IMG/VR virus record: IMGVR_UViG_3300032236_001613
Span: 1-64,000 of that record
Strand: one strand, 5' to 3'
Length of the DNA stretch: 64,000 bases
The position numbers and the translations under genes were made by a program. Each line of letters opens with the position of its first letter. The stretch's first letter is position 1. Below, piece by piece: positions 25,031 through 62,336 of this stretch. The notes beneath the pieces were generated by a model that had not been told where the DNA came from, did no database searches, and saw nothing but the letters and a program-made list of their open reading frames with translations.

Positions 25031-25642
25031 ATGAAAAATTTTAAAAGATATTTTAACGAAGTTACTGGTGCTAAAAAGTGGGATTTCCGCATTAAAATTG
25101 CCGGAGATGTTACTACAGAACAAGCTAATTTAATAAAAGCACTACTTGATAAGTATCAAGTTTCAGAATTTAAAAAAGTAGGAACTACACCAATACAATC
25201 TCTTCCTTTGGATTTTCCAAAGATTAAGAATAGCGAAGTATCTATTTTTGAAACAGTACTAGATTACCCAACTACACAATTTGAATTGAGAGATTACCTA
25301 GCTAATAGCTTAGGTGTTCCAAAAGATAATATGGTTGTACGTCGCCCTGGCGAAGATTTGGAAGTTTACCAAGAACCACACGAATCAAGAGAAGGTGCTT
25401 TGTTAAACGATAACGAATACAAAGAATCAACTAATGCAAACTTTGATGACTATTATGGTGACAAATATAATACATCGTTTTTAAAAGAATTAAACGATCT
25501 ATTAAAATTGCAAAGAAAAGCACGTGGGGAAGAAGTTCCTACAGAAGGTGCTGCTCACTATAATGTCGACGAAGCACAGAACAATACAAGTCCCATTAAA
25601 CAGTCCGGGGACCCAAGAAAAAATACCTCTAAAGGAAAATAA
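25031..25642 (+). CDS. putative head-associated protein
   Basis: N-terminal MKNFKRYFNE resembles T4 capsid-targeting peptide; TAAATA upstream. Confidence 0.45.
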   Translation: MKNFKRYFNEVTGAKKWDFRIKIAGDVTTEQANLIKALLDKYQVSEFKKVGTTPIQSLPLDFPKIKNSEVSIFETVLDYPTTQFELRDYLANSLGVPKDNMVVRRPGEDLEVYQEPHESREGALLNDNEYKESTNANFDDYYGDKYNTSFLKELNDLLKLQRKARGEEVPTEGAAHYNVDEAQNNTSPIKQSGDPRKNTSKGK

Positions 25643-44088: not shown

Positions 44089-44601
44089 GTGAACAAAAGA
44101 ATTTATTTGGATATGGACGGTGTACTAGCTGATTGGAACACCGGAGTTGAAGGTATTCTGGGCTATAGGCGTAAAGATGCAAATGCTCATTACGATCCTA
44201 AAGATTGGGCAAAGGTTAGACAACATCAACGAATGTATCGAGATTTACCTGTAATGCCAGACGCCGAAAGGTTAGCCGATACAGCAAGAAAGTTTAGGGA
44301 TCAGTTAGGATGGGAGTTACTGATACTAACTGCTGTTCCTAAGGATAATGATTTTAAATGGGCATTCTGGGACAAGTTTGTATGGGCAAACAAATACTTT
44401 CCGGATATTCCTGTACACTTTGGGCCATATTCAAAAGATAAACAAAAACATTGTAAGCCCGGTGATATTCTAATTGACGATCGTAAAAGCAACTGCGATG
44501 AGTGGGAAGCAAAAGGCGGTGTTGCAATTAGAGTTACTAACGAACGTGTTGATCTAGCTATCGATGAATTAGAAGCAATGTTTAAAGAGTTAAACCTTTA
44601 G
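44089..44601 (+). CDS. HAD-family 5'(3')-deoxyribonucleotidase
   Basis: LDMDGVLAD, ILTA, K..W, LIDD. Confidence 0.88.
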   Translation: MNKRIYLDMDGVLADWNTGVEGILGYRRKDANAHYDPKDWAKVRQHQRMYRDLPVMPDAERLADTARKFRDQLGWELLILTAVPKDNDFKWAFWDKFVWANKYFPDIPVHFGPYSKDKQKHCKPGDILIDDRKSNCDEWEAKGGVAIRVTNERVDLAIDELEAMFKELNL

Positions 44602-44800
44602 ACAGATCGTTAATCGTTTGAATAGCATCAACGCAGCTGACATGATCAGGATAAATTCCTGTTCCTGTAATACCAGATGGGGACTGCCATCTTAAAAACC
44701 AGGAGTCCCCTATCTCAGCTACTGCAATTAGCCAACCATATTTGTTTAAAATTGGTCCTATACGAAGATGTGGTACTTTTTGAAAATCGTGATCAAACAT
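44582..44800 (-). CDS. hypothetical protein
   Basis: Last ORF of minus-strand operon. Confidence 0.5.
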   Translation of the reverse strand: MFDHDFQKVPHLRIGPILNKYGWLIAVAEIGDSWFLRWQSPSGITGTGIYPDHVSCVDAIQTINDLSKGLTL

Positions 44801-44806: not shown

Positions 44807-46168
44807 TTATGACTCGTCGTTAGGTGTTTCCGTTTCTTCTTCATTTGATTCGCCGTCGCTAGCAGGACGTTTCTTTTTAGTCATCCACCCTGCATCTATA
44901 AATTTCTGTAATTTTTTAATTTCTTCGTCAACATCATAAGTTTTTATTTTTGTATCTGAAGTTTGCAATGTAGGATCTTCGGAATTAGTTTTCATATACT
45001 CTTCAATTTCCGATTTTTGATTTTTTAATCCAGTGACTAAATCATAATAAAGGTAAGGATATTTTTCTTTGATCATTTCTTTATTAGGAGGCACATCGGC
45101 GATGTTCATAAAGTATGGTCCGCCTGCATCAAACTGATATCTTTCTTTTCCAACAATCTCTCTATCAACTCCAGCTTTTTTAATATTTTCTTCTGAAGGG
45201 TCGTAAGGATTTAATTGGAAAATCATTGCTCTAGAAGAATAATTATCAAAGTGCCCAGCATAGCTACTATTTGCTGTGCACCATGTTGTACCTAATCCCA
45301 TAGCAACATTAGCAGCTCGATTAAGTGTAGTATATATTTTATAATCGTTATTATCAACAATAATAAAAGCACGTACTGAACGTCTCATCGCAAGCACACG
45401 CATTTTTTCGTTATAGTCTTTTAATATCTGTTCATAATGGTATACTAAGTAAAATCCTAAATCTCTTATACTATCAAATTTTCCTAAATCTGTATGATTA
45501 GCATCAAGCATATTTCTATTTTTTAAGAAGTACCATTTGCTAAGATTCATATTTAACGTACCGGTTATGTCTTCCCAGTTGTGAGCACCTTTGATATATT
45601 TTTCAACAATCCATTTGCTATTAACACCATCTCGAGAATAAGGATTACCTTCGTAGCCAGTCTGTTCAATACGATCGAGATTTGATAAAAACCAATGCGC
45701 AATTTCTTGATCAGTAGCTTTAGGAATCGCTACAGTTGTTGATGGTAATGTTCGAGGAATGTTAGCTTCCTCATGCTTAGTTTTCAAGTTTTCAAATTCA
45801 GGTAGTTTCTTTAGATCATTTTCAACTTGATTAGGTTTTAATCTAAATTGTAGTCCTATTTTATCAAACTTTACTCCACTAGCATATAAGTCAGCCATTT
45901 GCTTCAAACGTTCGGCCTGTGTGTTAGCGACCTTAATTGGACGATCGATCTTTTTTGATTGCGCAGGCGGAGGAGTGTATCCGTTTACTTTTTTTATAAA
46001 ATCTGAAGGAAATGATACGGGATTGTTTTTAATATCTAATCTTACAGCATCGGCTAACTTTTGAACGAGGTTTTTATTACTAAAAACATATTGGCTCCCC
46101 TTTGTAAGAGGAGCAAACTCTTCTGTTAAAAAACTTTCTACTAAATCAATAAGATACCGTATATTCAT
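44807..46168 (-). CDS. putative virion-packaged protein with GTxWCT domain
   Basis: MNIRYLIDLVESFLTEE N-tag; GLGTTWCTA...F..Y...RYQF motif. Confidence 0.55.
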   Translation of the reverse strand: MNIRYLIDLVESFLTEEFAPLTKGSQYVFSNKNLVQKLADAVRLDIKNNPVSFPSDFIKKVNGYTPPPAQSKKIDRPIKVANTQAERLKQMADLYASGVKFDKIGLQFRLKPNQVENDLKKLPEFENLKTKHEEANIPRTLPSTTVAIPKATDQEIAHWFLSNLDRIEQTGYEGNPYSRDGVNSKWIVEKYIKGAHNWEDITGTLNMNLSKWYFLKNRNMLDANHTDLGKFDSIRDLGFYLVYHYEQILKDYNEKMRVLAMRRSVRAFIIVDNNDYKIYTTLNRAANVAMGLGTTWCTANSSYAGHFDNYSSRAMIFQLNPYDPSEENIKKAGVDREIVGKERYQFDAGGPYFMNIADVPPNKEMIKEKYPYLYYDLVTGLKNQKSEIEEYMKTNSEDPTLQTSDTKIKTYDVDEEIKKLQKFIDAGWMTKKKRPASDGESNEEETETPNDES

Positions 46169-46173
46169 AGATA

Positions 46174-48240
46174 TTAATACTGGCTAGGATTTAATAAAGA
46201 ACTTCTAATAGCATCTAATATAGGTTTAAGTCCGGTTGCACTTCCTTTAGCAAGATCATACATGAATTCTGCTTTTTCTTGATCGTTCATACCTGACATA
46301 GCCGAATTAAACGCTCTATCCACAATTAATCTTAACGGACTATTATAGGAGGATACATCAAGATCACTAGTAGTGTTTAGTGCCGCTATAAATTTTTTAA
46401 TTTTTGCACCGAGTGAAGAAGCTGTCTGTGCATCATCGTAATTCTGTGCAGCATTAGCTCTATGAATTCTTGCGTTAACAACACTAATAGCATTATGACC
46501 TAATTTTGTAAGAACTGGGCGTATTCTATTAATTACAGCTGCTTTGTCTCGATCGAGATTGAGATTTTTACTAACATCAGGACGTCGTGAAGACATTTTT
46601 TCTCTGTCAACTGCACCTCTAGCAATCCACATCTGTTCTAAAGTACCTAATTGTTCTCTTAAAAGATCGAATGTATTTGGTGCACGAGGATCTGGTCTAT
46701 TTGGAATTCCCATTCTTGCTCTCATTACGCGAGGATCAACATCTCTATCAACTTCGTCGTCGTCACCGGAAAGTCTAAACAACTCAGGGTTAACTTCCTC
46801 ACCACCTTTATAAGCAAGAATCTGGAAAGGCATAGTATTGTCTCTAGCTGGATTGTATTCTTCTCTTCTTTGTGCAGCAGCCTTTGACATACGTTCGATA
46901 TGTTTCTTATCTGGTTTAACTGCAGCCATTCCGTCTCTATAGACTAAAATAACGAAATTGTCAGGATTTGATTTAAATTCCTGATTCATTAATCGTAAGC
47001 TAATGTTGTGCTTTTCGTATGGTGCTTCAGCACTAAGTTTATTACGACGGTGTAAGAAACGAATTAGATACTGACCACTTTTTCTTTGTGTTTGGCTAAG
47101 TCCAGTTTCGGGATCGCCTAGCATTTGAGTTAAAGTACTGGATTCATTAATCATAATCGATTCGATTAATTCTTCGTTCCATACTTTAAATGCTTCTTGT
47201 TCAATGCTTTCGAAAACTTGTTCTTTAGCATATTTGACTTTAAAATTCTTAAACTGCTCTGTTAAGTAGCTGGAGTTTTTCATTTTCATTTCGGTTGACT
47301 CTCTTCTTGGTAATCTTGGGCGGTCTTGGCCAATAGATCTATTGTCGTTGCCACCTCTGTTATTATTTCTACTATCCGCTTCGGGCCATGCGTAAATGTA
47401 ATAGCCCATTAAGTTATTATCCATAAAATCACGTACAACGTGGAATCGTATTCCCATTGCAGAGTATTCTCTTATTTCTGCTCTATATCCAGGGATGTTA
47501 GGATGTTCTACACCCGGATCACCTAGACGCTGTGCATTGTTTTCTAACCATCGACCAACTTGTTGCATTTCAGCCATTGATGTAAAGTTATCAGCACCTG
47601 CTCCTGGTCCTTGTGGATTAAACCCACCAGGTCCACCACGATGCCCAATCATCTGCTGCATACCGGGCTGATTGAGATGCGCAATCACTGTAATATCTTC
47701 AATTGGTGTTCTTGTTAACTGTCCAAAATGCTGGCGTCCAATAACACGCACTGCATTTTTCATATATCCAGGTAGATTTCTAACCTGATGCCATTCGATT
47801 TCACCGCCAGGTACAGTAACTTCTCTGTGTAGTATGTCTGGTAAAGTATTTGGCTCTACAGGTACTTCAGGCTCACCATACCCAGGATCATTAGCTCTAG
47901 GAGCTAACTCTGCATCGGGAATCTCGTCCTGCCCTACATCTAGCTGATCAATACGGCCAAGGTAATCACGCATTTGATCGTTAGGGTTTAGTCTTACATT
48001 GCGTGTACGTTCAGCACTGGCACGATTTAACTCAGCACGACCTCCTGCAGGAGCATCCTTTTTAGCAGGTTCCGAAGCTGCGGGCTCTGATTTCGCCGGG
48101 GCATTTTTAACGCCACCTACAACATCATTAAAATCATCAAACTCGGGAAACGGATTTATTTTTACCCGAGGTTTTTCAGCAGTAGGTTTAGCAGATGTGC
48201 TATCCGGTGCTTTCTTCTTTTTGTCATCATTATCAGGCAT
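46174..48240 (-). CDS. large multi-segment late protein, probably virion internal
   Basis: Late promoter upstream; Pro/Asp-rich N-part; central YLTE/ESIE/LIES/MINE cluster. Confidence 0.5.
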   Translation of the reverse strand: MPDNDDKKKKAPDSTSAKPTAEKPRVKINPFPEFDDFNDVVGGVKNAPAKSEPAASEPAKKDAPAGGRAELNRASAERTRNVRLNPNDQMRDYLGRIDQLDVGQDEIPDAELAPRANDPGYGEPEVPVEPNTLPDILHREVTVPGGEIEWHQVRNLPGYMKNAVRVIGRQHFGQLTRTPIEDITVIAHLNQPGMQQMIGHRGGPGGFNPQGPGAGADNFTSMAEMQQVGRWLENNAQRLGDPGVEHPNIPGYRAEIREYSAMGIRFHVVRDFMDNNLMGYYIYAWPEADSRNNNRGGNDNRSIGQDRPRLPRRESTEMKMKNSSYLTEQFKNFKVKYAKEQVFESIEQEAFKVWNEELIESIMINESSTLTQMLGDPETGLSQTQRKSGQYLIRFLHRRNKLSAEAPYEKHNISLRLMNQEFKSNPDNFVILVYRDGMAAVKPDKKHIERMSKAAAQRREEYNPARDNTMPFQILAYKGGEEVNPELFRLSGDDDEVDRDVDPRVMRARMGIPNRPDPRAPNTFDLLREQLGTLEQMWIARGAVDREKMSSRRPDVSKNLNLDRDKAAVINRIRPVLTKLGHNAISVVNARIHRANAAQNYDDAQTASSLGAKIKKFIAALNTTSDLDVSSYNSPLRLIVDRAFNSAMSGMNDQEKAEFMYDLAKGSATGLKPILDAIRSSLLNPSQY

Positions 48241-48299
48241 TAAAAACCCCTAAAATGTTTTATTAATTATTTATCAAGGTCGTTCTAATAAATATTACT

Positions 48300-48755
48300 A
48301 TGCAAATACAAGAACTGCTATTAGAACTTGCTGATCAACCCTACGACTATCGATTAATCTTCCAAGATCAAACCTTGCACAAATATCGATTTTATAACGA
48401 AAAAAAGTTAATGTATTATGTATTTGTTGATAGATTACAAGAAAATCAAGTACCATACCTAGCAGTAATGTTTCAACAAGTAGATCCTAACGATTTGTGG
48501 TACTCGGGGGATAAAGTTACCGGAACAGGCGATGCTTATCGAGTATTTGCTACTGTAGCTAAAATTATTAACGATGATATAGCCAAGTACGGAGCCGAAG
48601 GACAAATGATATTTGCAGGAGAGGGCGAAAGTAGAAATAAACTCTACGATCGCATAGCTAAAAACCTAAGCCGTTATGTACCTATGTATCAACTAGATCA
48701 TGTTGAAACCGAAGGACCTACTCATGTCTACCACTTTAACAAAATCAATAAATGA
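48300..48755 (+). CDS. putative virion-packaged protein
   Basis: MQIQELLLE N-tag; TGTGDA.RVFATV...SR.KLY.R motif. Confidence 0.55.
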   Translation: MQIQELLLELADQPYDYRLIFQDQTLHKYRFYNEKKLMYYVFVDRLQENQVPYLAVMFQQVDPNDLWYSGDKVTGTGDAYRVFATVAKIINDDIAKYGAEGQMIFAGEGESRNKLYDRIAKNLSRYVPMYQLDHVETEGPTHVYHFNKINK

Positions 48756-48969
48756 TCTCAAAATCGGCCAATTAGCAATAATCAAATATTCCTCTAACGT
48801 ATCATTAAACGAATTAGGATTCTTATCAGGTGAACATGTAAAAGTTATAGCTAGAGCTGCCTTTAATGGTCCTACCGCTGTTAGAGTCGGTACTAGCGTA
48901 TTTGCTTTACGTAAAGAAGAAGCTGAGACAATTAGAGTCTATAACGTCCTACACGATAAACGTTCTTAG
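48724..48969 (+). CDS. feoA: FeoA-family SH3-like protein
   Basis: LKIGQ.A.I...L.ELGFLSGE.VKVI.RA.F.GP..VRV....FALRKEEA..I.V. Confidence 0.8.
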   Translation: MSTTLTKSINDLKIGQLAIIKYSSNVSLNELGFLSGEHVKVIARAAFNGPTAVRVGTSVFALRKEEAETIRVYNVLHDKRS

Positions 48970-49165
48970 CACCCTTTATCGGACTACCTGTAGAAATAGC
49001 ACGACCTACGTCGTTAAAGTCTACTCCTTTCTTTGTACACCAGTCTTGTAAATCGTTAATAATATACTGCTTAACAGTTTTCGTAGGATTTTTAGAATTA
49101 CAGACTTTGATCAAATACGGTAATGTGCGATCAGCATCTTCAATAAGCTTAATATATTCTCTCAT
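48932..49165 (-). CDS. small protein, stand-alone copy of C-terminal module of 49175..49972
   Basis: Shared KQY...DL..W...KGVD......TG....GAKNVYRVGRYRL. Confidence 0.7.
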   Translation of the reverse strand: MREYIKLIEDADRTLPYLIKVCNSKNPTKTVKQYIINDLQDWCTKKGVDFNDVGRAISTGSPIKGAKNVYRVGRYRL

Positions 49166-49174
49166 AACAATTCC

Positions 49175-49972
49175 TTATAATCTATAACGTCCTACACGAT
49201 AAACATTCTTAGCACCACGAACAGTTTCTCCTGTTCCTAATGCTCTTATTGCAGCTTGTAAGTCTACACCCTTGCTGTTAGCCCAGGCTTCTAAATCCTG
49301 CACTACATACTGTTTACCGCTTAATCGAGAAGTATTACGAGGATTGCAGATCTGTATAAGATACCCATTATGTCCTCGATCAACGACCTTATACTCTTTA
49401 ATACTTGAACCTTTCAATTTTCGATAATCATCAGCACCCCAACTTACTTCACTATCATCGTGAGGAGTTTGATCAACTTTTACTGGGATGTTTAATTTTC
49501 GGCATTGAGACTGAAATCTTTTTAAATGTCCTCGTAATCCTCGAGTATTCCAATCCTCTTGTTTTATCCAAACTTCTTTAACGCAGCTTAATGGTATATC
49601 TCCCATGGCTCTTTCTTCTTCTTCGGAGCTATGACCGCCGGGGGCTATCTGTAGATTGTCAGGATCGTAATCACTTAATACTTCCCAGTTGAACGGTAGT
49701 ATTTTAACACGATGCCTTAATTTATTTTGATCTATAACAAAGGTAACATGTGCTGTACTTTTATCGGCCCAAAGATTAACTGCGTTCCAGTTTATATTAC
49801 TAAACCATAATCGAGGATTTCTAGTTAAACTGACACTGGTATGCGCTATAACACCGTCGTTTGAAAATGCTTTTATAAAACCAGATTTTAGTATTTCAAA
49901 AGCATTGTTTAAAGTAGTGCCATGATATAAATCTTGACGATTGTTTTCTAATAATAATTCATTTAGACGCAT
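49175..49972 (-). CDS. putative ADP-ribosyltransferase-fold protein
   Basis: LYHGT...I..SG, VSLTR, EEEE: H-S-E ART-like motif order; MRLNELLLE N-tag. Confidence 0.6.
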   Translation of the reverse strand: MRLNELLLENNRQDLYHGTTLNNAFEILKSGFIKAFSNDGVIAHTSVSLTRNPRLWFSNINWNAVNLWADKSTAHVTFVIDQNKLRHRVKILPFNWEVLSDYDPDNLQIAPGGHSSEEEERAMGDIPLSCVKEVWIKQEDWNTRGLRGHLKRFQSQCRKLNIPVKVDQTPHDDSEVSWGADDYRKLKGSSIKEYKVVDRGHNGYLIQICNPRNTSRLSGKQYVVQDLEAWANSKGVDLQAAIRALGTGETVRGAKNVYRVGRYRL

Positions 49973-49984
49973 AATAGATATTTA

Positions 49985-51025
49985 TTAATTGCGTCTGCCT
50001 ACACGCTCTACAGCGTTTTCAATATACTCTTCAATATCCTGATCACTATAACCTAATAACTGCCCGGCTCGTCGATGCGCCTGCTGCCAAAGACGACTAG
50101 TAGGATTATAAGTTCTATAGACATTACTAGATGTTATCTCTAAAAACTCTTTAACATCAGCTTCATGCCCGGGTAATGCTACAATAAAACGCATAAACCC
50201 ATTGAGAAGATACTGATGTATGATCCAACCGGAGTTCTGTACTAGTTCAGCAATACGCCGTCTATGCGGGGCAAACTCCTGAACGTCAAACCAAGCTAAG
50301 GGCTTTTCTCCTGCTAGCATTAACCGAAACTCTTTACCCACATGAGGCCCTATGGTTTCGTTGACACTAGATCTAAATCCTGTATAAGCATACGGATCGT
50401 TGATCACAGGCACATTACCTCTCCATAAGAGATTACCACCTATATAGTCAAAATCATCACAACTGTGCTGGCTACAAACTAACTGCTCAGTTTCAAAGAA
50501 CTTATCCCACATAGATCCAAATGGCTCAGATAGTGCAATCACTTGCTCAAGCTTCTTTCTTAAAGGCGCTTCCTTACCTAAACTCTTTAAGTGTATTTTC
50601 ATCTTGTCAATAATGGATATCTTATCACCTGAATTAACATATCTGTCCGATGGAGACTCCTGTTCAGCATAATCAGCCATAAAGTTTAGAGCACGCTTTA
50701 ATCCACGCTGCTCGGGCAGCTCATCTAACTGTTCGGTAGGTAGCCCTATATACTCTTGCCCATCTACTGTAAACTTACGCGGTGTACCAAATCTGGGTAC
50801 ATAAGGATTATTAATACGCTTGGCTACGCGATAAAATTCTAAAGGATCAAAGGTTAATCTACTGGAAAACTCTATACCAGGATATCTAGTACCATAAACT
50901 TTGAATAACCCACCATGCGGACTAAGAAAAACTGCAGCATAGCTACCCTCACCTACATAGGTATAACCGCGAGAAGTTAGAAATTCTTTAAGCTGATCTC
51001 TAGTGATTACTTCATATATACGCAT
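49985..51025 (-). CDS. protein-kinase-like domain fused to second domain
   Basis: VGEGSYAAVF, FKV, P.F, E.L, D...GNL, V.NDP; after SVNE a second domain ending GQLLGYSDQDIEEY. Confidence 0.6.
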   Translation of the reverse strand: MRIYEVITRDQLKEFLTSRGYTYVGEGSYAAVFLSPHGGLFKVYGTRYPGIEFSSRLTFDPLEFYRVAKRINNPYVPRFGTPRKFTVDGQEYIGLPTEQLDELPEQRGLKRALNFMADYAEQESPSDRYVNSGDKISIIDKMKIHLKSLGKEAPLRKKLEQVIALSEPFGSMWDKFFETEQLVCSQHSCDDFDYIGGNLLWRGNVPVINDPYAYTGFRSSVNETIGPHVGKEFRLMLAGEKPLAWFDVQEFAPHRRRIAELVQNSGWIIHQYLLNGFMRFIVALPGHEADVKEFLEITSSNVYRTYNPTSRLWQQAHRRAGQLLGYSDQDIEEYIENAVERVGRRN

Positions 51026-51028
51026 ATA

Positions 51029-51397
51029 TTATTCGGGCAGCATCTTTTCCGCTACACGTTTAATTAATTGACGCTGGCTAACAGTTAACTCTAATACTTG
51101 TTTAGCTACATGCGTTTTAGTTGACGAGTTAACTGTAATATACCCTTCTTGATCAACTTCGCCTACCGGCTGCTGTATACTAGGTACTGTTTGATCAGGC
51201 GAACCCGTTTCGAGACTAACTGTATAACGATACTCGGGATTACCTAGATAAGGATAAAGCGCAACATAGAATCTATACTTATTAGGATCTAGACGTCCAA
51301 CTAATAAATGCCCAATACCAGATTTAATAGCTAAGTCAGTAAAATCATGACGTACAATAGCAGAGACATTTTCTCGTAATAATTCTGTTACTCTCAT
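51029..51397 (-). CDS. putative virion-packaged protein
   Basis: MRVTELLRE N-tag. Confidence 0.55.
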   Translation of the reverse strand: MRVTELLRENVSAIVRHDFTDLAIKSGIGHLLVGRLDPNKYRFYVALYPYLGNPEYRYTVSLETGSPDQTVPSIQQPVGEVDQEGYITVNSSTKTHVAKQVLELTVSQRQLIKRVAEKMLPE

Positions 51398-52281
51398 TGT
51401 TTATGCTTCTTACTGTGCACAGCATCCTTCTCTGGCTCACTGTCTACGTCAAAATCAAATCCATGTTTGTCATCAGATCGATCAGGTAATGCTAAGGGTT
51501 CTTCTTCAGTGTCTAAATCAGCTAATCGATTACGCATAGCTTTTACTTGATCAGGACTCATTTGATCAGTCTCTGACTTATCCGATACTCCGGATAATGC
51601 TTTGACTCCTGCTAACTGTGCTAATCTATCTAACCCAAACTCTGCAGCACTGTGCGCTGCTGCCTTTGTAGCAATATCAGCAGCTTGAGGTTCTTGACTA
51701 TCTTTAGGTTCGTCATCTAGTGTACCTGCAACTCTTTGATCTACATAAGATCCTACATCGGTTTCGTCAACTATATTTCCTTCTTCATCTGCGGTAGAAT
51801 CTACGCCATATGTTTGCGGATCGTACTCAAGACTTACAGATTCGAATTTTTTGGTGTTAGGATCTTGATAAGTTAATAAAGCTTCATAGGGATTTTCATC
51901 ACCAAACGATGTGTGTAACCACGGTACTCCACCTTCGCTGACTCCCGTTTCAAAATGTGAACCCCAGGGCATAGTTCCATGCGGCCCGTTACCAATCTCG
52001 GTTACATCATTTACACCAGGTTGCCATTCTTCAAACTCGGGTGCTTCACTATAACTAGAATCCAAATAAAGCGTACCCATATTCTTTACAGTCCAACTAG
52101 TAGCTGCAGCTACTAGTCCATCGATCATTGAACCGGCTTCAACTGCTGAAGCAGCAGCCGCTGTAGCAGCCACAGGCTCCGCAGCAGTACCTACAGGCAA
52201 CTTAGCACCTGTGGCCGCAGCTATTCCTGCTGCTCCTAGACCTTTGAGAAAATCTCTACGGGAAATTTCATATATACGCAT
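51394..52281 (-). CDS. acidic protein with twin-arginine (Tat)-like signal
   Basis: MRIYE-ISRRDFLKGLGAAGIAAA; late promoter. Confidence 0.6.
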   Translation of the reverse strand: MRIYEISRRDFLKGLGAAGIAAATGAKLPVGTAAEPVAATAAAASAVEAGSMIDGLVAAATSWTVKNMGTLYLDSSYSEAPEFEEWQPGVNDVTEIGNGPHGTMPWGSHFETGVSEGGVPWLHTSFGDENPYEALLTYQDPNTKKFESVSLEYDPQTYGVDSTADEEGNIVDETDVGSYVDQRVAGTLDDEPKDSQEPQAADIATKAAAHSAAEFGLDRLAQLAGVKALSGVSDKSETDQMSPDQVKAMRNRLADLDTEEEPLALPDRSDDKHGFDFDVDSEPEKDAVHSKKHKQ

Positions 52282-52366
52282 AATGTTTTATTTACCGGCA
52301 ACACAGACCTTTTCGCGCGAAGCGCCGAGCGCAGATTTTTTTATAACCCCGATAAATACCCAGACA

Positions 52367-52714
52367 ATGCATATCAAAGAACTGGTTACCTTAGACGAAC
52401 ACTGGCTACAAACAGCAGCTCAACAACTACAACCCGAACAACTACGTCAACGTTTACAAAACCTTGAACAATGGTTCTCCGACGAAGGCTCAGCTGCTGC
52501 AGATATGATCGAAACTTATAACGAATGGATACAGGGCACGGCAGATCCAGAATCAGTCCAAATGGCTAATCAACAACTGGTACGCTTGCTAAAATACTTG
52601 GGACTGGCCGGAATCGCTGTACTACCAGGTAGCACTTTCTTACTACCAGTCTTGATTAAAATAGCTCAACATTACGGCATAAAACTAATACCCGACCCTA
52701 TTAAACCACACTAA
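52367..52714 (+). CDS. small protein with hydrophobic C-terminal segment
   Basis: Start MHIKELVTLDE after TAAATA; LGLAGIAVLPG..LLPVLIK. Confidence 0.55.
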   Translation: MHIKELVTLDEHWLQTAAQQLQPEQLRQRLQNLEQWFSDEGSAAADMIETYNEWIQGTADPESVQMANQQLVRLLKYLGLAGIAVLPGSTFLLPVLIKIAQHYGIKLIPDPIKPH

Positions 52715-52758
52715 AATTTGATTGACAATCTTGATTATATTATAGTATATTACAATAT

Positions 52759-52956
52759 ATGATAATACGATATCTGGAAAATCCACATACTGGACTACTT
52801 ACACTGGTACGACACAACGATTTAGATTTAAAATGGGCTAGAAGATTAACTACATTGATTATACACGAGTTTGAACAAAATAGCCCAGAACATACTATGT
52901 TCTTACTACGCAACTTTAATCGACTACATAACAACGACATCGAAGATTGGACTTGA
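52759..52956 (+). CDS. hypothetical protein
   Basis: TTGACA promoter directly upstream. Confidence 0.45.
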   Translation: MIIRYLENPHTGLLTLVRHNDLDLKWARRLTTLIIHEFEQNSPEHTMFLLRNFNRLHNNDIEDWT

Positions 52957-52958
52957 TA

Positions 52959-53237
52959 CTAAAAACTAATACCATTGTCAACAAAATACCCTTCAACAAT
53001 GTTTCGAACTAATTGCGGGTGACAATGCACATACTCACTGCGTACCGTAAACCTGTCCTTTATTATGCTTAATATCCTGCTTTCATGCAACCGATCAGGT
53101 ATACTATACGTTTTTAAAAAATAACAACTGGGGTTGGCTGTCTTATATGCTCTTAGCCTACTACTGGGATTGCCTGTGATTCCTAACTTACAACGGTGCG
53201 GCTTGTCTGGATCTACCATGATATAATAATAAAGCAT
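52959..53237 (-). CDS. GIY-YIG/T5orf172-like protein
   Basis: YYIM...KLGIT.NP..RL..Y.TANP...E..I...EY. Confidence 0.7.
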   Translation of the reverse strand: MLYYYIMVDPDKPHRCKLGITGNPSSRLRAYKTANPSCYFLKTYSIPDRLHESRILSIIKDRFTVRSEYVHCHPQLVRNIVEGYFVDNGISF

Positions 53238-53297
53238 ACGGCTTATTTAATACTAGAATCACTATAACTACCCAAAAAAATTACTGCGCAAAATTTT

Positions 53298-53594
53298 TTA
53301 TGGTGGGAAATTTTTGAATGAGGCAGTTTTGACCCATGCATCAGGCACCATACGATGCTTGCTGACAAATAAATCATGCAATTGATCACCTGTGACATTA
53401 TAACGACGACAGACTTTTTGCATGATTTGATCAATTATGTCATAGTTAAACTTGAGCCCTTGACTGTGTCTGACCCTTAATGCACGCTCTAAAGCAGCTA
53501 CAGCTTTACTGGGATGAGGGGTTCCTGAAACATGTGCAGGCTTCATGGACTGTTGAGAATCAAATAGGTCGATTAAAGATCTTAAGGAACGCAT
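53298..53594 (-). CDS. small late protein
   Basis: TATAAATA-5-ATG; LHDLFVSKH...PD.W. Confidence 0.55.
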   Translation of the reverse strand: MRSLRSLIDLFDSQQSMKPAHVSGTPHPSKAVAALERALRVRHSQGLKFNYDIIDQIMQKVCRRYNVTGDQLHDLFVSKHRMVPDAWVKTASFKNFPP

Positions 53595-53947
53595 ACGAAT
53601 ATTTATATACATTGTAGAGAGGCCTATAGTACACGCAAAAAATTGCGCTGCAAAAAATAAAGACCACGCAGATCTCGGGGCCTGGTGGTTTTACGACCCC
53701 GGGGTATGGTTAGCAAGCCCCAACAGCAGCACAGCACGCAGCTGAGCACTATATACCTCCCGTGGGGTCTATATGCCTCCCACCTGAGCCGGCCGGCACA
53801 GCTGCCCCGGAAAATTTTTTCTTTTAGTTTTCCGAGAAAAAGATAGCTTATTGTGCCGTTGGGAGAGCCTCGCAATAAAAAAGCACGGGCTAGGGTTTTT
53901 GTAATTAGATAATAGTACAGTTGTGCTATATTATATACGCTGTTAGT

Positions 53948-54033
53948 AACCTGTGCATAGTAATATAACTGTAACGCAAATGCTAAGTTATTGTTTTTGT
54001 TAGCATTTTTTTAATTGCGTTACTACACAGGTT
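53948..54033 (+). other. long nested inverted repeat (hairpin/cruciform or structured RNA)
   Basis: AACCTGTG/CACAGGTT, GTAACGCAA/TTGCGTTAC, AAATGCTAA/TTAGCATTT. Confidence 0.7.
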
Positions 54034-54426
54034 CCCGTTAATTAAAAAAGCGCAGTGCAGTTTGTGTGCACGGGGTAGTCCCCGTGTTAATAAAAATACA
54101 CAGTTGCAGTACCTGCAGCAACGCAGTGGGAGGTGCCCCTCGATTACATCAGCTGCTGTGCAGATTTTTTAGTGGGGTCTGGTTGACAGAGTTAACTTAA
54201 CTGTTAAACTTAACATATGCAAACAGCAGCACATACAACACGCAGTCAACAACAGCAGGAGCAGGGTGTGTGCGTGCGCTGCTGGGAGGTCTCTCGCAAA
54301 GCAGTCTTTAAACTGCGCTGTGCGTTACTGGGAGAATCCCGTGTTTGCAAAAGCAGCGCACACGTTTGTGCAATTGGGAGAATCCCTAGTTTGTTGCTGC
54401 TGCACGCAAAAGTGCACCAGTGGGAA

Positions 54427-54515
54427 GATTACAAAAACTTAATCTAATAGTGCTTGCAACTGCTGTTGCCGGCGCTATACTACATAACGTAGCAATAGTG
54501 CTACAGCACGCACAA
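54427..54515 (+). promoter_or_regulatory. early promoter cassette, copy 1
   Basis: GATTACAAAAACTTAAT-10-TTGCAA-16-TATACT-GTAGC/GCTAC hairpin-AGCACGCAC. Confidence 0.75.
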
Positions 54516-54528
54516 TAGGAATCTGTAT

Positions 54529-54816
54529 ATGCCCTCGTATCGTATTCGTTTGCTTGCCAATGGCGAAGTTGAGATTGCTGTCAACAGCCGCCGCGCACGT
54601 GGTCGTGTAGTAGCTGAAAAGACTGTTGAGGTTGAAGAGCCCGCAGCAGCAAAGCGTCAGACCAAAGCAGCGCAAGTGCGCGACAAGATCCGTCAAGTCA
54701 AGCCTGTAATGGGTGATGCTGGGCGCCGCGTTGTTAGCGCATGGGCACGCACAAAGTTGGGTATGAATCCTAGCATGGCTGCTACTTATGTGAAAAACAA
54801 CTGGACCTGCTGCTAG
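54529..54816 (+). CDS. basic early hypothetical protein
   Basis: AGGA SD after cassette; C-terminal LGM...A.TY..N. Confidence 0.7.
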   Translation: MPSYRIRLLANGEVEIAVNSRRARGRVVAEKTVEVEEPAAAKRQTKAAQVRDKIRQVKPVMGDAGRRVVSAWARTKLGMNPSMAATYVKNNWTCC

Positions 54817-55016
54817 TTTACAGCAGAAGAGAGCAGTAGCATTAGTGCTGCTGCTCTCACCAGTTGTATTCTAAGAGTTGGGTTTGGGCCGGCGGGGTTT
54901 GACCCCATAGCAGTTTCTGCAATGCTAAGGCCTTTAGCGGGGTATTCAAGAATAAAGGTTGATCTGTAGATAACTACTGTTATACTAACAGCGTTAAGCA
55001 CGCTAAGGAGTTTGTT

Positions 55017-55127
55017 ATGGCTCGTGTTAAGAAGAATGGGTGCCTAATGGCACGTAAGACCCGACAAGTTAAACATGCCGGATATAAGTGCGCTGCAACT
55101 GGGCGCTGGCGCCGAGGGTTCAAATAA
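55017..55127 (+). CDS. 36-aa Arg/Lys-rich peptide
   Basis: MARVKKNGCLMARKTRQVKHAGYKCAATGRWRRGFK; TAAGGAG SD and promoter upstream. Confidence 0.6.
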   Translation: MARVKKNGCLMARKTRQVKHAGYKCAATGRWRRGFK

Positions 55128-55225
55128 TGGCTAAGGTACGGCGTCCTCGTAATCAACAGCGTGTGTTGCAGCAGCGAATTGCCTGCAGCCGTGTGGGCGG
55201 ATGTCGTCCAAAACGGAGCCGCTAA
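55127..55225 (+). CDS. 32-aa Arg-rich peptide
   Basis: MAKVRRPRNQQRVLQQRIACSRVGGCRPKRSR; TAATG coupling. Confidence 0.55.
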   Translation: MAKVRRPRNQQRVLQQRIACSRVGGCRPKRSR

Positions 55226-55362
55226 TGTTAATCGACGATGAATCCGAAGACTATTACGAGCGTCGTGTGGCTCGTGCTGATGCTGCTTTCGATCTCTTTA
55301 TTGATTGGACTAGTGTTGCAGCCATGATTGGGATCGTGTTATATTTGTTGCTGCGTTGTTAA
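55225..55362 (+). CDS. 45-aa peptide with C-terminal TM helix
   Basis: MLIDDESEDYYERR...VAAMIGIVLYLLLRC; TAATG coupling, GGAG SD. Confidence 0.55.
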   Translation: MLIDDESEDYYERRVARADAAFDLFIDWTSVAAMIGIVLYLLLRC

Positions 55363-55389
55363 ACGTTTTCCTGTGTGTTGTGCATGGTT

Positions 55390-55418
55390 GGGCGGAGTTC
55401 GCATCCGCCCTTTTTTTT
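55390..55418 (+). terminator. intrinsic terminator
   Basis: GGGCGGA-7-TCCGCCC T8. Confidence 0.9.
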
Positions 55419-55540
55419 AGCTGGCTGCGGTCTCGGGGTTCCTCCCACTAACAGCGTTTTGGTATAATACTCCTGCTGCAGTATGTGTTGGGAGGCGCCC
55501 CAGTGTTTAAAATGTTTGTGCGCTATTTTCTTATTGGGAT

Positions 55541-55637
55541 GATTACAAAAGCTTAATGTTAAAGTGCTTGCTTTATTTTTGTGTGTGCTTATAATAGCAA
55601 TTGTAGCAATAAAGCTACGCATAAAATAAGCACGCAC
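55541..55637 (+). promoter_or_regulatory. early promoter cassette, copy 2
   Basis: GATTACAAAAGCTTAAT-10-TTGCTT-16-TATAAT-GTAGC/GCTAC-AGCACGCAC. Confidence 0.7.
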
Positions 55638-55638
55638 T

Positions 55639-55875
55639 ATGTACACATTGGAAGTTAGCTATCCGTTGACGCTGTATTGGAACAGCATTAACGTAGATCG
55701 GGAGATCTCTGAAGCTGTTAATGCTACGAGCACAGGCAGCGGAGCGGGATTTGGGCAACGTGATCTCACGTTCCGCTTTACAACTGCAGAGGCTGCTAAT
55801 GCTGCTGCAGAGCGAGCACGACGTATACACGCTAGCATCTCGTGCAACGTGTCTGCTGACGCTTACTACGCTTAA
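55639..55875 (+). CDS. early hypothetical protein
   Basis: Follows cassette 2; GSGAGFGQRDL.F.F. Confidence 0.65.
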   Translation: MYTLEVSYPLTLYWNSINVDREISEAVNATSTGSGAGFGQRDLTFRFTTAEAANAAAERARRIHASISCNVSADAYYA

Positions 55876-56020
55876 ACAACTGCCTCGTTACGCACAGCTG
55901 AAAATGCTGTGCGTGCAGGCGGGGTCAGAATCCCAGGAAGAAAAAATTGCAAAGCTCGATGCAGGGGTGGGGTCAGATCCCGTGCAAACTTTTACGCAAA
56001 CTTTTGCAAGACAGTGAGAT

Positions 56021-56110
56021 GATTACAAAAACTTAATGCAAAAACAGGTTGCAACTGCTACTAGACTTGCTATGCTACATAACGTAGCGATACTGCTACA
56101 GCACGCACAA
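56021..56110 (+). promoter_or_regulatory. early promoter cassette, copy 3
   Basis: GATTACAAAAACTTAAT-11-TTGCAA-16-TATGCT-ACATAACGTAGC..GCTACAGCACGCACAA. Confidence 0.75.
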
Positions 56111-56120
56111 AGGGTTAGAT

Positions 56121-56423
56121 ATGAACGAGATTGCTAAAGCCCTAATCACACTCGCTAGCGAGATTAAGGAGCAGGCGGGCCCTGTCTCACTGATCTTCCA
56201 TGCAGCAGGAAGTCAGGGCGACTTTGAGACCGCGTTGTACATCTTCAACGACAAGAGTCTCTTCAACGCTACTTACTTCACTGAAGAAGAGCTTGAGAAG
56301 TTTAACCTCATCATGCCCGCTATTGCAGATGGGCTCAACAAGTTGCAGAAGTTTGACGAGCAAATTGCTGCATTAGATGCCGCTAAGTACCACTCAGCAG
56401 ACTATCTCAAAGCAGTTAACTGA
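56121..56423 (+). CDS. early hypothetical protein
   Basis: Follows cassette 3; terminator at about 56435-56466. Confidence 0.7.
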   Translation: MNEIAKALITLASEIKEQAGPVSLIFHAAGSQGDFETALYIFNDKSLFNATYFTEEELEKFNLIMPAIADGLNKLQKFDEQIAALDAAKYHSADYLKAVN

Positions 56424-56631
56424 CACATAGCCGGCGCATAGTAGGGAACTGCTATGCGCTTTTTTGTTGCCGTTAAGAACCCCGCAGAAGGTTTTTACGC
56501 ACATGTATATAAAGTCTCGGGGTAGCCCCAAGGACTGCAGCCGCAAACGTGAACGAGGTCTAGCGGGGTATTTAAAAAGGTTGACGGGCTGTAGTTGTGT
56601 CTGTATGCTTGTGCTGCTAAAGGAGCACGCA

Positions 56632-56739
56632 ATGAACTTTAAGTACTTCGCACCATGGCTTTTTGCATTCATCTTATTACTGTTGGGACACTTTACTGCT
56701 GCTATCTGCATTGCCGTGTTGATCTTGCTCTGCAGCTGA
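56632..56739 (+). CDS. 35-aa hydrophobic membrane peptide
   Basis: MNFKYFAPWLFAFILLLLGHFTAAICIAVLILLCS; TTGACG-17-TATGCT promoter, AAGGAG SD. Confidence 0.6.
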   Translation: MNFKYFAPWLFAFILLLLGHFTAAICIAVLILLCS

Positions 56740-56820
56740 AAAATCTTTGTGAGGCAGAGTTGACAGCGTTGTTGCAACGTGTAAACTACTAATGTAGAAC
56801 TAATAACAAGGATCTCATTT

Positions 56821-57024
56821 ATGCACGCTAAGTTCAAAATTGTAGATCGTAAGACTGGAGTTGTACTCTACGACCAAGTGCACGGAGTCGGTCGCGCCAC
56901 GCACTTGCTGTATGGTGCTCGTGCAAGTAATACGCGAGTGTTCAAGACTGATGAGCGAGGCTCGCGTGAAATTACTCTCAACTTTAATATTTGGCAGCTG
57001 GAAAACGGCTTACGGGAGGCTTAA
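56821..57024 (+). CDS. early hypothetical protein
   Basis: TTGACA promoter at 56761, AAGGA SD. Confidence 0.65.
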   Translation: MHAKFKIVDRKTGVVLYDQVHGVGRATHLLYGARASNTRVFKTDERGSREITLNFNIWQLENGLREA

Positions 57025-57445: not shown

Positions 57446-57539
57446 CACCTTTGTACAGGTACTGTTGATCTTCACAGTAGACAAAAGGTTGGCGAACTCT
57501 TTATAATAGAGGAGTTCGCTAATCCTATGGAGATCAGAG

Positions 57540-57638: not shown

Positions 57639-57673
57639 TGATTTTGCGTGCTGCCGCAATGATGCGGCACTTT

Positions 57674-59118: not shown

Positions 59119-59119
59119 T

Positions 59120-62314: not shown

Positions 62315-62336
62315 ATTCGAAACTAGTGTATACTAC

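What the first reader, a model, noticed from the sequence alone, without database searches (positions are those of the whole stretch)
44807..53594. Array of about 10 unrelated late genes sharing a capsid-targeting-like N-terminal tag: a candidate virion-loaded effector arsenal
Seen: otherwise dissimilar ORFs start MNIRYLIDLVE, MQIQELLLE, MREYIKLIE, MRLNELLLE, MRIYEVITRDQLKE, MRVTELLRE, MRIYE, MHIKELVTLDE and MRSLRSLIDLFD; outside the array, 25031 starts MKNFKRYFNE. Most operons here sit behind TAAATA late promoters. Established: T4 internal proteins carry a 10-aa capsid-targeting sequence (MKTYQEFIAE) removed after Glu by the gp21 prohead protease, and are ejected with the DNA. Inference: this is a modular tag-plus-payload locus. 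Its payloads (ART fold, kinase fold, Tat-signal protein, GTxWCT domain) are packaged and injected to act before phage transcription, possibly as anti-defence or host-takeover factors. It directly adjoins the early region.
Basis: partly seen in the sequence, partly recalled or inferred. Interest (0 to 1): 0.85.

Follow-up and report, generated by a model that had tools for sequence, protein, structure and literature searches.

The report
T4-style capsid-targeting tags in jumbo phage
An uncultivated 328-kb relative of the RaK2 jumbo phages has a variable late-gene cluster in which unrelated proteins start with a 9-11-residue peptide much like the tag phage T4 uses to load proteins into its head, so these are probably injected proteins, but this has not been shown.

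Summary
All nine quoted N-termini are at the stated positions. Six of 12 cluster genes fit M-[RKQHN]-[ILV]-x-[ED]-[LIV], against 0 of 76 other window ORFs (Fisher p = 1.7e-6). Apart from one shared C-terminal module, the proteins are unrelated.

The window is the first 64 kb of IMGVR_UViG_3300032236_001613, a distant RaK2-like jumbo phage.

The tag has the same hydrophobic/acidic pattern as T4 IPII/IPIII (MKTYQEFIAE) and T4 Alt (MELITELFDE). In relatives, which encode the T4-type Peptidase_S77 prohead protease, the capsid protein, the protease and a small head-module protein carry the same N-terminal hydrophobic-x-Glu signature in 92-100% of cases. Background is 20%.

The tag is portable. Two payload domains occur in metagenomes both with and without it. 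The cluster varies between relatives and shares a TAAATA start-proximal motif with structural genes.

Caveats:
- MREYIKLIE is part of a domain, not a tag.
- MRIYE on the Tat-signal protein is ambiguous.
- The 453-aa protein belongs to a conserved clade-wide family.
- There are no proteomics data and no cultured relative carries these genes.

Verdict: probably a new member of the T4 capsid-targeting/internal-protein kind. Packaging, cleavage and injection are inferred.

The parts
44582..44800 (-). 72-aa ORF with no tag, last gene of the 688/453/72 operon
   Evidence: Conserved in L084, L085 and L163 just downstream of the 453-aa homologue.
44807..46168 (-). 453-aa protein starting MNIRYLIDLVE|S (type-B tag, R-x-L-I-x-L-V-E-S). 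Member of a large conserved family with no known domain.
   Evidence: At least 182 homologues. 98% carry hydrophobic-x-Glu within residues 2-14, usually followed by Ser or Ala. No Pfam or PHROG hit.
46174..48240 (-). 688-aa untagged protein (MPDNDDKKKK...), the conserved partner of the 453-aa gene
   Evidence: Adjacent to the 453-aa homologue in L084, L085, L163 and L172. 32% identity over its full length to the 1057-aa protein of L172.
48268..48294 (.). Divergent intergenic region with TAAATA on both strands (48273-48268 minus, 48289-48294 plus)
   Evidence: Read from the sequence. TAAATA is associated with gene starts.
48300..48755 (+). 151-aa DUF6934 protein with tag MQIQELLLE and TAAATA 5 nt upstream
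   Evidence: Pfam DUF6934 E = 9.8e-8, covering residues 17-133, so the tag lies outside the domain. Promoter motif.
48724..48969 (+). FeoA-domain protein with no tag (start may be 48700 or 48724)
   Evidence: Pfam FeoA E = 7e-14. Conserved next to the cluster in L163, L164 and L166.
48932..49165 (-). 77-aa stand-alone copy of the mobile ~70-aa module ending YRVGRYRL. Its start MREYIKLIE is part of the domain, not a separate tag.
   Evidence: E = 3e-21 to the C-terminus of the 265-aa protein. Aligns with internal IKEYKVVDRGHNG. The same module is in P0002-P0004.
49175..49972 (-). 265-aa protein: tag MRLNELLLE, then an ADP-ribosyltransferase-like domain (about residues 10-175), then the YRVGRYRL module. 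TAAATA upstream.
   Evidence: Pfam PARP E = 0.0033 (below threshold), PDB Arr-2 E = 0.076, DarT-like structural neighbours TM 0.52. The 84%-identical orthologue P0001 starts MLIQELLVE.
49985..51025 (-). 346-aa two-domain protein: tag MRIYEVIT, a protein-kinase-like domain (about 10-215) and a C-terminal IGPH...LLGY domain (220-343)
   Evidence: AlphaFold2 pLDDT 86.5, with residues 1-7 below 50. Foldseek top hits are aminoglycoside phosphotransferases and Ser/Thr kinases. 119 homologues.
51029..51397 (-). 122-aa protein with tag MRVTELLRE
   Evidence: Top score with the head-module-trained matrix. The L166 orthologue starts MRIQEVILE.
51394..52281 (-). 295-aa protein with a twin-arginine (Tat) signal, MRIYEISRRDFLKGLG. 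TAAATA upstream. Tag status is ambiguous.
   Evidence: Pfam TAT_signal 30.1 bits, above the 22.7 cut-off. The L163 orthologue starts MRLYEITRRGFLKG.
52367..52714 (+). 115-aa protein with tag MHIKELVTLDE and TAAATA 9 nt upstream
52759..52956 (+). 65-aa conserved ORF (MIIRYLENP) behind a sigma-70-like promoter
   Evidence: 52% identity to the 91-aa ORF of L163. Promoter at 52722-52751, 11 of 12 matches.
52959..53237 (-). 92-aa T5orf172/GIY-YIG-like protein with no tag
   Evidence: Pfam T5orf172 E = 1e-4. Conserved in L166.
53298..53594 (-). 98-aa protein with type-B tag MRSLRSLIDLFD (Asp where Glu is expected) and TAAATA 6 nt upstream
   Evidence: Orthologues start MHSLRPLIDLCE (L163) and MHSLRTLIDLCN (L166).
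25031..25642 (+). 203-aa protein outside the cluster, between the tail tube and terminase genes, starting MKNFKRYFNE (like T4 IPI)
   Evidence: Weak PHROG 'virion structural protein' hit, E = 0.0011. Relative L169 has tagged genes (MISFKQFITE, MITFKQFLAE, MKIKDLFEN) at the same position.

Best explanation
The cluster is the counterpart, in an uncultivated RaK2-like jumbo phage, of the T4 internal-protein/Alt system.

Proposed mechanism:
1. Late in infection the genes are expressed from TAAATA-type promoters, together with the structural genes.
2. A short N-terminal amphipathic peptide (M-basic-hydrophobic-x-E-hydrophobic-hydrophobic-x-E, or the variant R-x-L-I-x-L-V-E) docks each protein onto the scaffolding core of the assembling prohead.
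3. The Peptidase_S77 (T4 gp21-type) prohead protease removes the tag after hydrophobic-x-Glu.
4. The mature proteins stay in the head and leave with the DNA at the next infection, where they act before phage genes are expressed.

Likely cargo: a kinase-like enzyme, an ADP-ribosyltransferase-like enzyme, a DUF6934 protein and several small proteins.

Shown: the tag and its enrichment, its portability, its match to the T4 pattern and to head-module proteins of relatives, the promoter motif, and the variability of the locus.

Inferred: docking, cleavage, packaging, ejection and any host-directed function.
For: 1. **Pattern match to tags verified in T4.** IPII/IPIII start MKTYQEFIAE|A, IPI starts MKTFKEFTST, Alt starts MELITELFDE. 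In T4, residues 4 and 7 target and residues 8 and 10 direct processing (PMC9026906). These correspond to the hydrophobic positions 3, 6 and 7 and to Glu 9 of MRLNELLLE and MRVTELLRE.
2. **The lineage has the protease.** RaK2 gp21 and an environmental relative are Peptidase_S77 (E = 3e-24 and 3e-27). 77 gp21-homologous ORFs were found across the 80 capsid loci fetched; some are fragments and none is from this contig.
3. **Head-module proteins of relatives share the signature.** Hydrophobic-x-Glu occurs within residues 2-14 in 100% of capsid proteins (MTQALLE|S...ALLE|G), 92% of proteases and 100% of the 75-aa protein between portal and protease. Other ORFs show 20%. A matrix trained on that 75-aa family ranks cluster genes 1-4 in the window.
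4. **Portability.** 86% of 49 kinase-like homologues (50%-identity representatives) carry hydrophobic-x-Glu in residues 2-14, and 61% the fuller two-hydrophobic form, e.g. MRAQEFLAE and MRANEFITE. This holds whether the kinase domain is N-terminal or internal. The C-terminal domain occurs with the tag fused directly (MKIQELILE-TIGPH, MRSNEFISE-TIGPHEG) and without it (MAGIVGPHEG).
5. **The tag is outside the fold.** pLDDT is below 50 for residues 1-7 of the 346-aa model, and DUF6934 begins at residue 17.
6. **Orthologues keep the pattern more than the sequence.** 5 of 9 tag residues are identical against 84% overall.
7. **Promoter context.** The TAAATA motif is shared with tail and terminase genes, and tags also occur on operon-internal genes that lack it.
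8. **Variable content.** Content differs among close relatives (L084, L085, L163, L166), and the cluster is absent from all seven of the more distant relatives whose loci were read gene by gene (L087, L088, L091, L104, L126, L139, L150); no homologue of its genes was found in the other gp41 loci. T4 internal-protein genes are likewise poorly conserved among T4 relatives (PMC9026906).
9. **Similar arrays elsewhere.** L167 has five tagged genes in a row, one a GNAT acetyltransferase. L169 and L171 also have arrays.
10. **Internal head protein in the group.** The phAPEC6 paper states that the RaK2-like coliphage 121Q shows the characteristic bubblegram otherwise described only in phiKZ-like phages, where it marks proteins embedded in the packaged DNA (PMC7247149).
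Against: - No virion proteomics exist and no cultured phage carries these genes.
- This genome's own protease, scaffold and capsid genes lie outside the window and could not be fetched.
- RaK2 proteins detected in virions by mass spectrometry do not clearly carry the tag.
- The Tat-signal protein looks destined for export, not for the head.
- One 'tag' is part of a domain (77-aa protein).
- The nucleotidyltransferase next to gp41 in relatives starts M-x-I-x-E-F although it looks like a metabolic enzyme.
- The 453-aa family is conserved and lies among replication genes.
- Residues after the putative cleavage Glu are mixed in the kinase family.
Confidence: 0.55

Rival explanations
1. The N-terminal helix is a functional, portable signal for a destination other than the capsid. 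Candidates are another late assembly, a phage chaperone, or the phage-encoded Clp machinery (ClpS, ClpP and ClpA-like genes occur in this clade), or membrane association.
For: The tag is on a Tat-signal protein and on nucleotidyltransferase homologues. ClpS and ClpP lie next to the 453-aa homologue in L172, and RaK2 has a ClpA-like protease. RaK2 virion proteins lack a clear tag.
Against: The pattern matches the experimentally defined T4 capsid-targeting sequence and the Alt N-terminus position by position. It also matches capsid, protease and core-protein N-termini of relatives. No known Clp, chaperone or membrane signal has this form.
Confidence: 0.2
2. The shared start is a by-product with no targeting role. 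It could come from repeated recombination or duplication at a common 5' cassette, or from a constraint on the first codons of late mRNAs whose promoter nearly abuts the ATG.
For: TAAATA lies only 4-10 nt from the ATG. The two MRIYE genes share an identical first 15 nt. Modular shuffling through regulatory cassettes is described in T4-type phages (PMC2839356, abstract seen).
Against: Codons differ among tags. Ten other TAAATA-driven genes lack the tag, while operon-internal genes without TAAATA have it. The hydrophobic/acidic spacing is kept across dozens of 50%-identity clusters from unrelated samples. Untagged versions of the same domains exist.
Confidence: 0.13
3. There is no single tag. The list mixes a domain strand (77 aa), the n-region of a Tat signal (295 aa), a conserved family-specific helix (453 and 98 aa) and a few chance amphipathic starts.
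For: 77 aa; Tat; the 453-aa family's helix runs straight into its conserved ALTKGSQ block. Hydrophobic-x-Glu alone occurs in 20% of ORFs.
Against: Six genes fit a strict pattern found in 0 of 76 other window ORFs. An independently trained matrix picks them out. The same tag is on homologues and on unrelated proteins in other contigs.
Confidence: 0.1

Closest known systems
T4 capsid-targeting sequence system (internal proteins IPI, IPII, IPIII and the ADP-ribosyltransferase Alt, processed by gp21)
   Same: A short N-terminal propeptide with the same hydrophobic/acidic pattern ending in (L/I)-x-E. Unrelated cargo share the tag. One cargo is ADP-ribosyltransferase-like. The locus varies between relatives. 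The lineage has a Peptidase_S77 protease. Late-type promoter.
   Different: No sequence homology to IPI-III or Alt. The host phage is a distant RaK2-like jumbo phage (terminase 42% identical to RaK2). Most cargo are larger enzymes rather than small basic proteins. Packaging and cleavage are untested.
Ejection and inner-body proteins of phiKZ, 201phi2-1 and SPN3US
   Same: Jumbo phages that load many proteins into the head and process them after Glu with a T4-related protease. Paralogues have conserved N-termini (PMC5694885).
   Different: Most of those propeptides are over 100 residues and are cut at A/S/G-x-E. Here the tags are 9-11 residues with hydrophobic-x-E, the T4 style.
Polyvalent proteins of phages and conjugative elements (Iyer et al. 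2017, PMC5512222)
   Same: The domain repertoire overlaps: a weak Kinase-PolyVal hit in a homologue, an ART-like domain, GNAT in L167, and ParB_N fused to the C-terminal domain in P0023. The same idea of effectors delivered with the DNA.
   Different: Polyvalent proteins are single polypeptides of 2-15 domains. Here each domain is a separate gene with its own tag. All matches to polyvalent-protein families are below threshold.
P1 Dar (defence against restriction) head-incorporated proteins
   Same: Anti-defence proteins loaded into the head and ejected with the DNA (PMC12810830 and PMC9024508, seen).
   Different: No homology, and the loading hierarchy is different. These papers were not read beyond their abstracts.

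Membership tests
T4-type capsid-targeted internal proteins (IP/Alt class) | N-terminal 10-20-residue propeptide with the capsid-targeting pattern, ending in (L/I)-x-E | tested here: met
   Met clearly for the 151-, 265-, 122-, 115- and 453-aa proteins. Partly met for 346 aa (first 8 residues) and 98 aa (Asp in place of Glu). Not met for 77 aa. Ambiguous for 295 aa.
T4-type capsid-targeted internal proteins (IP/Alt class) | The genome encodes a gp21-type (Peptidase_S77) prohead protease | tested here: inconclusive
   Not in the 64-kb window, and the rest of the contig could not be fetched. 77 gp21-homologous ORFs were found across the 80 capsid loci of relatives, and Pfam confirms S77 for two of them.
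T4-type capsid-targeted internal proteins (IP/Alt class) | Protein present in the virion, with the propeptide removed after Glu | not testable with these tools
   The phage is uncultivated and there are no proteomics data.
T4-type capsid-targeted internal proteins (IP/Alt class) | Co-expression with head genes | tested here: inconclusive
   Only a shared TAAATA start-proximal motif with structural genes. No transcript data.
T4-type capsid-targeted internal proteins (IP/Alt class) | Sequence homology of the mature part to IPI, IPII, IPIII or Alt | tested here: not met
   No PHROG or Pfam hit to these families. This defines the individual T4 families, not the mechanism.
Polyvalent proteins | Two to 15 effector domains in one polypeptide | tested here: not met
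   The genes are separate, with one or two domains each.
phiKZ-type ejection proteins | Long propeptide cleaved at A/S/G-x-E | tested here: not met
   The tags are 9-11 residues with a hydrophobic residue two positions before the Glu.
Protein-kinase-like fold (346-aa protein, N-terminal domain) | Bilobal kinase fold with a conserved D-x-x-G-G-N and a downstream N-D-P segment | tested here: met
   AlphaFold2 pLDDT 86.5. Foldseek top 50 hits are all kinases or aminoglycoside phosphotransferases, probability 0.9-1.0 for most, E down to 6e-4, TM low because the model has two domains. The motif was read from the homologues. Activity is untested.
ADP-ribosyltransferase superfamily (265-aa protein) | H-Y-E or R-S-E catalytic triad on the ART fold | tested here: inconclusive
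   Pfam PARP E = 0.0033, below its cut-off. Arr-2 E = 0.076. DarT-like neighbours TM 0.52. The single-sequence AlphaFold2 model was unusable (pLDDT 41).
Tat-exported proteins (295-aa protein) | Twin-arginine S/T-R-R-x-F-L-K motif followed by a hydrophobic stretch | tested here: met
   Pfam TAT_signal 30.1 bits, above the 22.7 cut-off. Conserved in L163.

The most novel reading that the evidence does not exclude
A very large clade of uncultivated RaK2-like jumbo phages uses a portable 9-residue encapsidation tag to load single-domain enzymes into the head. The cargo would include kinase-like, ADP-ribosyltransferase-like and GNAT enzymes, and perhaps a Tat-signal protein that the next host re-exports to its periplasm. 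This would be a 'disaggregated polyvalent protein' arsenal. The tag alone would then predict injected effectors in metagenomic phage genomes.
Probability: 0.35. Interest if true: 0.75.

Novelty: new member of a known kind. Interest (0 to 1): 0.55.

Why it matters
If the tag works as in T4, a simple N-terminal motif would identify the proteins that uncultivated jumbo phages inject with their DNA. These first-acting factors are otherwise invisible in sequence data and are prime candidates for host takeover and counter-defence.

It would also extend the T4 capsid-targeting principle, so far shown experimentally only in T4, to a distant and environmentally abundant jumbo-phage clade. And it would give a consensus tag that could be tested for loading foreign proteins into large capsids. 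The literature searches here found no description of such tags in RaK2-like phages.

Tried and rejected
- **DNA search in GenBank phages:** megablast of 44-54 kb found nothing.
- **Protein searches in GenBank phages:** tblastn of the 453-aa, 688-aa and 346-aa proteins, P0016 and an L167 protein found nothing, or only a weak hit to the C-terminal domain.
- **T4 late-promoter octamer:** TATAAATA is not enriched; only the TAAATA core is.
- **RaK2 as a proxy with mass-spectrometry data:** in the first 124 kb, virion-annotated proteins do not clearly carry the tag, so I stopped fetching the genome.
- **203-aa protein versus RaK2 ORF110:** no homology.
- **265-aa structure:** the single-sequence AlphaFold2 model was too poor for a fold search.
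- **ESM Atlas leads:** PcfJ for the 453-aa protein and LPD3/PBECR3 for the 688-aa protein score at chance level, so I set them aside.
- **Head-module 75-aa family:** it matches phrog_13986, which has no annotated function, so calling it a prohead core protein rests on position only.
- **Rejected:** treating MREYIKLIE as a tag, and counting the second LKE of the 346-aa protein as part of its tag.

Full report
**Source and context.** The window is the first 64 kb of IMGVR_UViG_3300032236_001613, a 328,068-bp contig. Its large terminase is 42-43% identical to those of the RaK2-like jumbo phages (RaK2, K64-1 and Escherichia relatives). The window encodes tail fibres, a 1122-aa sheath, tube, terminase, gp32-like SSB, UvsX, helicases, primase (gp61) and a DnaB-like gp41. 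After gp41 come a nucleotidyltransferase and a 5'-nucleotidase. The flagged cluster follows at 44.6-53.6 kb, mostly on the opposite strand. Beyond it lies a region of higher GC (0.45-0.48) with small ORFs and enriched sigma-70-like promoters: 35 against 18.3 +/- 4.5 in shuffles, four of them perfect.

**The observation.** All quoted N-termini are present. With the first 12 residues removed, the only significant similarity among the 14 proteins tested is between the C-terminus of the 265-aa protein and the 77-aa protein. The pattern ^M[RKQHN][ILV].[ED][LIV] fits 6 of 12 cluster genes, 0 of 76 other window ORFs (Fisher p = 1.7e-6), and 21 of 2692 ORFs in relatives' loci. Codon choice differs between tags, so what is conserved is the peptide. 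There are two flavours. Type A is M-basic-hydrophobic-x-E-hydrophobic-hydrophobic-x-E (151, 265, 122 and 115 aa, and the first 8 residues of 346 aa). Type B is R-x-L-I-x-L-[VF]-[ED]-S (453 and 98 aa).

**Promoter motif.** TAAATA lies 4-10 nt before an ATG that opens an ORF of at least 50 aa at 16 of 56 sites (29%). Unrelated hexamers of the same composition give 0-4%. The 16 genes include two tail fibres, tube, terminase, a head-tail adaptor homologue and six genes in the interval, five tagged and one untagged. Ten TAAATA-driven genes have no tag. Operon-internal tagged genes (346, 122 and 453 aa) have no TAAATA. The tag is therefore not a side effect of the promoter. The full T4 octamer is not enriched.

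**Comparison with T4.**
- From the T4 record, IPII and IPIII start MKTYQEFIAE|A, IPI starts MKTFKEFTST and Alt starts MELITELFDE.
- The Kuhn and Thomas review (PMC9026906) states that the 10-19-residue propeptides target internal proteins to the prohead core. Residues 4 and 7 matter for targeting and residues 8 and 10 for processing. Asp at position 10 blocks cleavage but not targeting. The review suggests this sequence may be a general way for T4-like phages to load diverse proteins.
- Shifted by one residue, MRLNELLLE and MRVTELLRE place hydrophobic residues and Glu at exactly those positions. VTELLRE differs from Alt's ITELFDE only conservatively.

**Link to the head module of this lineage.**
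- RaK2 has the order portal, ORF090, ORF091, gp21, ORF093, gp23.
- Its gp21, and that of an environmental relative, are Peptidase_S77.
- I fetched eighty environmental capsid loci. Capsid proteins start MTQALLE|SRWGETKEALLE|GL. The 75-aa ORF090 family starts M-x-[ILV]-x-[ED]-[LIM]-[FLY]. Scaffold proteins start MTKLEKLLKE or MAKKIDEILSE.
- Hydrophobic-x-Glu within residues 2-14 occurs in 100% of capsid proteins, 92% of proteases, 100% of the ORF090 family and 44% of scaffolds. In 2068 other ORFs it occurs in 20%.
- A position matrix trained only on the ORF090 family ranks cluster genes 1-4 of about 88 window ORFs, and 8 of the top 16 (Mann-Whitney p = 0.001).
- That the ORF090 family is a prohead core protein is inferred from its position. 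It matches phrog_13986, which has no annotated function.

**Portability.** The 346-aa protein has two domains.

For the kinase-like N-terminal domain, an exhaustive phmmer search of 1.84 billion representatives gave 119 hits. Of 49 homologues of this domain, 86% carry hydrophobic-x-Glu in residues 2-14 and 61% the fuller two-hydrophobic form (MRAQEFLAE, MRANEFITE, MKIKELLSE and so on). This includes proteins in which the kinase domain starts beyond residue 100.

For the C-terminal domain, some stand-alone homologues have the tag fused directly to the domain start (MKIQELILE-TIGPH, MRSNEFISE-TIGPHEG, MRAHEFITE-GEIGPHEG). Many have none (MAGIVGPHEG, MSGTIGPHTD).

In the AlphaFold2 model (pLDDT 86.5), residues 1-7 are below 50 while the next helix is above 90. 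DUF6934 begins at residue 17 of the 151-aa protein. The tag therefore behaves as an add-on module.

**Variability.** Using gp41 as an anchor, I fetched 80 loci at 67-81% identity. Only L084 and L085 had homologues of cluster genes (688, 453, 72 and 77 aa). L084 has a different tagged gene (MHIRDILLE). All seven of the more distant loci that I read gene by gene (L087, L088, L091, L104, L126, L139, L150) run from gp41 and the nucleotidyltransferase (with the 5'-nucleotidase in some) into other genes or the early region.

Two closer relatives were found through protein look-ups. L163 and L166 keep the cluster but with different content:
- L163 has a carbamoyltransferase, a new 432-aa MRSREFIVE gene and a split DUF6934.
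- L166 has extra MKIQELILE, MLIKDLLE and MNYFRKYIDIID genes.

Orthologues conserve the pattern more than the letters (MRLNELLLE against MLIQELLVE, with 84% overall identity). Arrays of tagged genes also occur in other contigs:
- L167 has five in a row, one a GNAT.
- L169 is a relative with the same terminase and tube families, and its tagged genes lie between tube and terminase. That is where this window has MKNFKRYFNE.
- L171 has three tagged genes (MKISEIITE, MRARDFLKE, MNLHDLFE) in a 94-kb contig.

**Payloads.**
- *Kinase-like fold:* supported. All top Foldseek hits are kinases or aminoglycoside phosphotransferases, and one homologue gives a weak Kinase-PolyVal hit.
- *ADP-ribosyltransferase-like:* three weak leads agree, but there is no usable model.
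- *Tat signal:* above the Pfam threshold.
- *453-aa protein:* belongs to a large conserved family (at least 182 homologues, about 50% identity over two thirds of its length), always next to a 688-aa-type gene. One example is a 359-kb NCBI contig, where the pair lies among ligase, RNase T and ClpP genes. The family's N-terminal helix L-I-E-[AS]-F-L-x-E is nearly universal and runs straight into a conserved ALTKGSQ block.
- *Mobile module:* a ~70-aa module ending YRVGRYRL is attached to the ART-like protein, stands alone (77 aa), follows the kinase-like protein in another phage (P0004) and leads P0002/P0003.

- MREYIKLIE aligns with an internal strand of that module, so it is not a tag.
- MRIYE on the Tat protein has only the first half of the pattern.
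- The 98-aa protein has Asp where Glu is expected. By the T4 rule that would allow targeting without cleavage, but this is speculation.

**What argues against packaging.**
- There are no proteomics data, and no cultured phage carries these genes.
- RaK2 virion proteins do not clearly carry the tag.
- Nucleotidyltransferase homologues in relatives begin M-x-I-x-E-F.
- A Tat signal implies export.
- The phAPEC6 paper notes a bubblegram in the RaK2-like phage 121Q (PMC7247149). That is only circumstantial support for internal proteins in this group.

**Verdict.** The sequence feature is real, non-random and portable. The best explanation, at about 0.55, is a T4-type capsid-targeting propeptide system. 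That makes the cluster a new member of a known kind, not a new mechanism. The literature searches found the concept well described for T4 and, with long propeptides, for phiKZ-like phages. They found nothing on it for RaK2-like phages.

Noticed in passing
window 1-53650 (e.g. 1691-1696, 26667-26672, 48289-48294, 53607-53602): TAAATA sits only 4-10 nt upstream of the ATG of 16 genes, with no Shine-Dalgarno sequence between. This suggests late transcripts that are leaderless or nearly so.
   Followed up: partly
window 53600-64000: The region has GC 0.45-0.48, against 0.33-0.43 (mostly 0.33-0.41) in the rest of the window. It has only small ORFs, enriched sigma-70-like promoters, at least eight copies of TAGCGGGGTATTTAAA and a 42-nt element repeated at 54474 and 56069. 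A similar GC-rich, ORF-poor stretch follows the cluster in L084.
   Followed up: partly
window 48932-49165 and 49175-49390; P0002-P0004: A ~70-aa module ending YRVGRYRL moves between the ART-like protein, the kinase-like protein (in another phage), a stand-alone gene and the N-terminus of a 304-aa protein. It may be a shared binding domain of these putative effectors.
   Followed up: partly
window 44807-48240; L084, L085, L163, L172: The 688-aa and 453-aa genes form a conserved adjacent pair across a large jumbo-phage clade, including a 359-kb NCBI contig (JAWVGW010000006.1). Function unknown.
   Followed up: partly
window 51394-52281: A late phage gene with a bona fide twin-arginine export signal, conserved in L163. 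The mature part is acidic and has no known domain.
   Followed up: no
window 48700-48969: A FeoA-domain gene is embedded in the cluster. It overlaps the end of the DUF6934 gene in another frame and is conserved in L163, L164 and L166.
   Followed up: no
L163:2796-4358: A carbamoyltransferase gene is inserted on the opposite strand inside the syntenic cluster of a close relative. The DUF6934 gene there is split into 53-aa and 85-aa pieces.
   Followed up: no
L087-L150, gene after gp41 (e.g. L092:8847-9536, L150:8304-9005): The Pol-beta-type nucleotidyltransferase next to gp41 starts with a tag-like M-x-I-x-E-F in many relatives (MRILELDLGFEQH, MQILEFQSP). In this window it starts MSKFVTPIVIH.
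   Followed up: no
L169:11655-13979: In this relative the large terminase seems to be split into two ORFs. The 511-aa ORF matches only the C-terminal half of the RaK2-type terminase profile.
   Followed up: no
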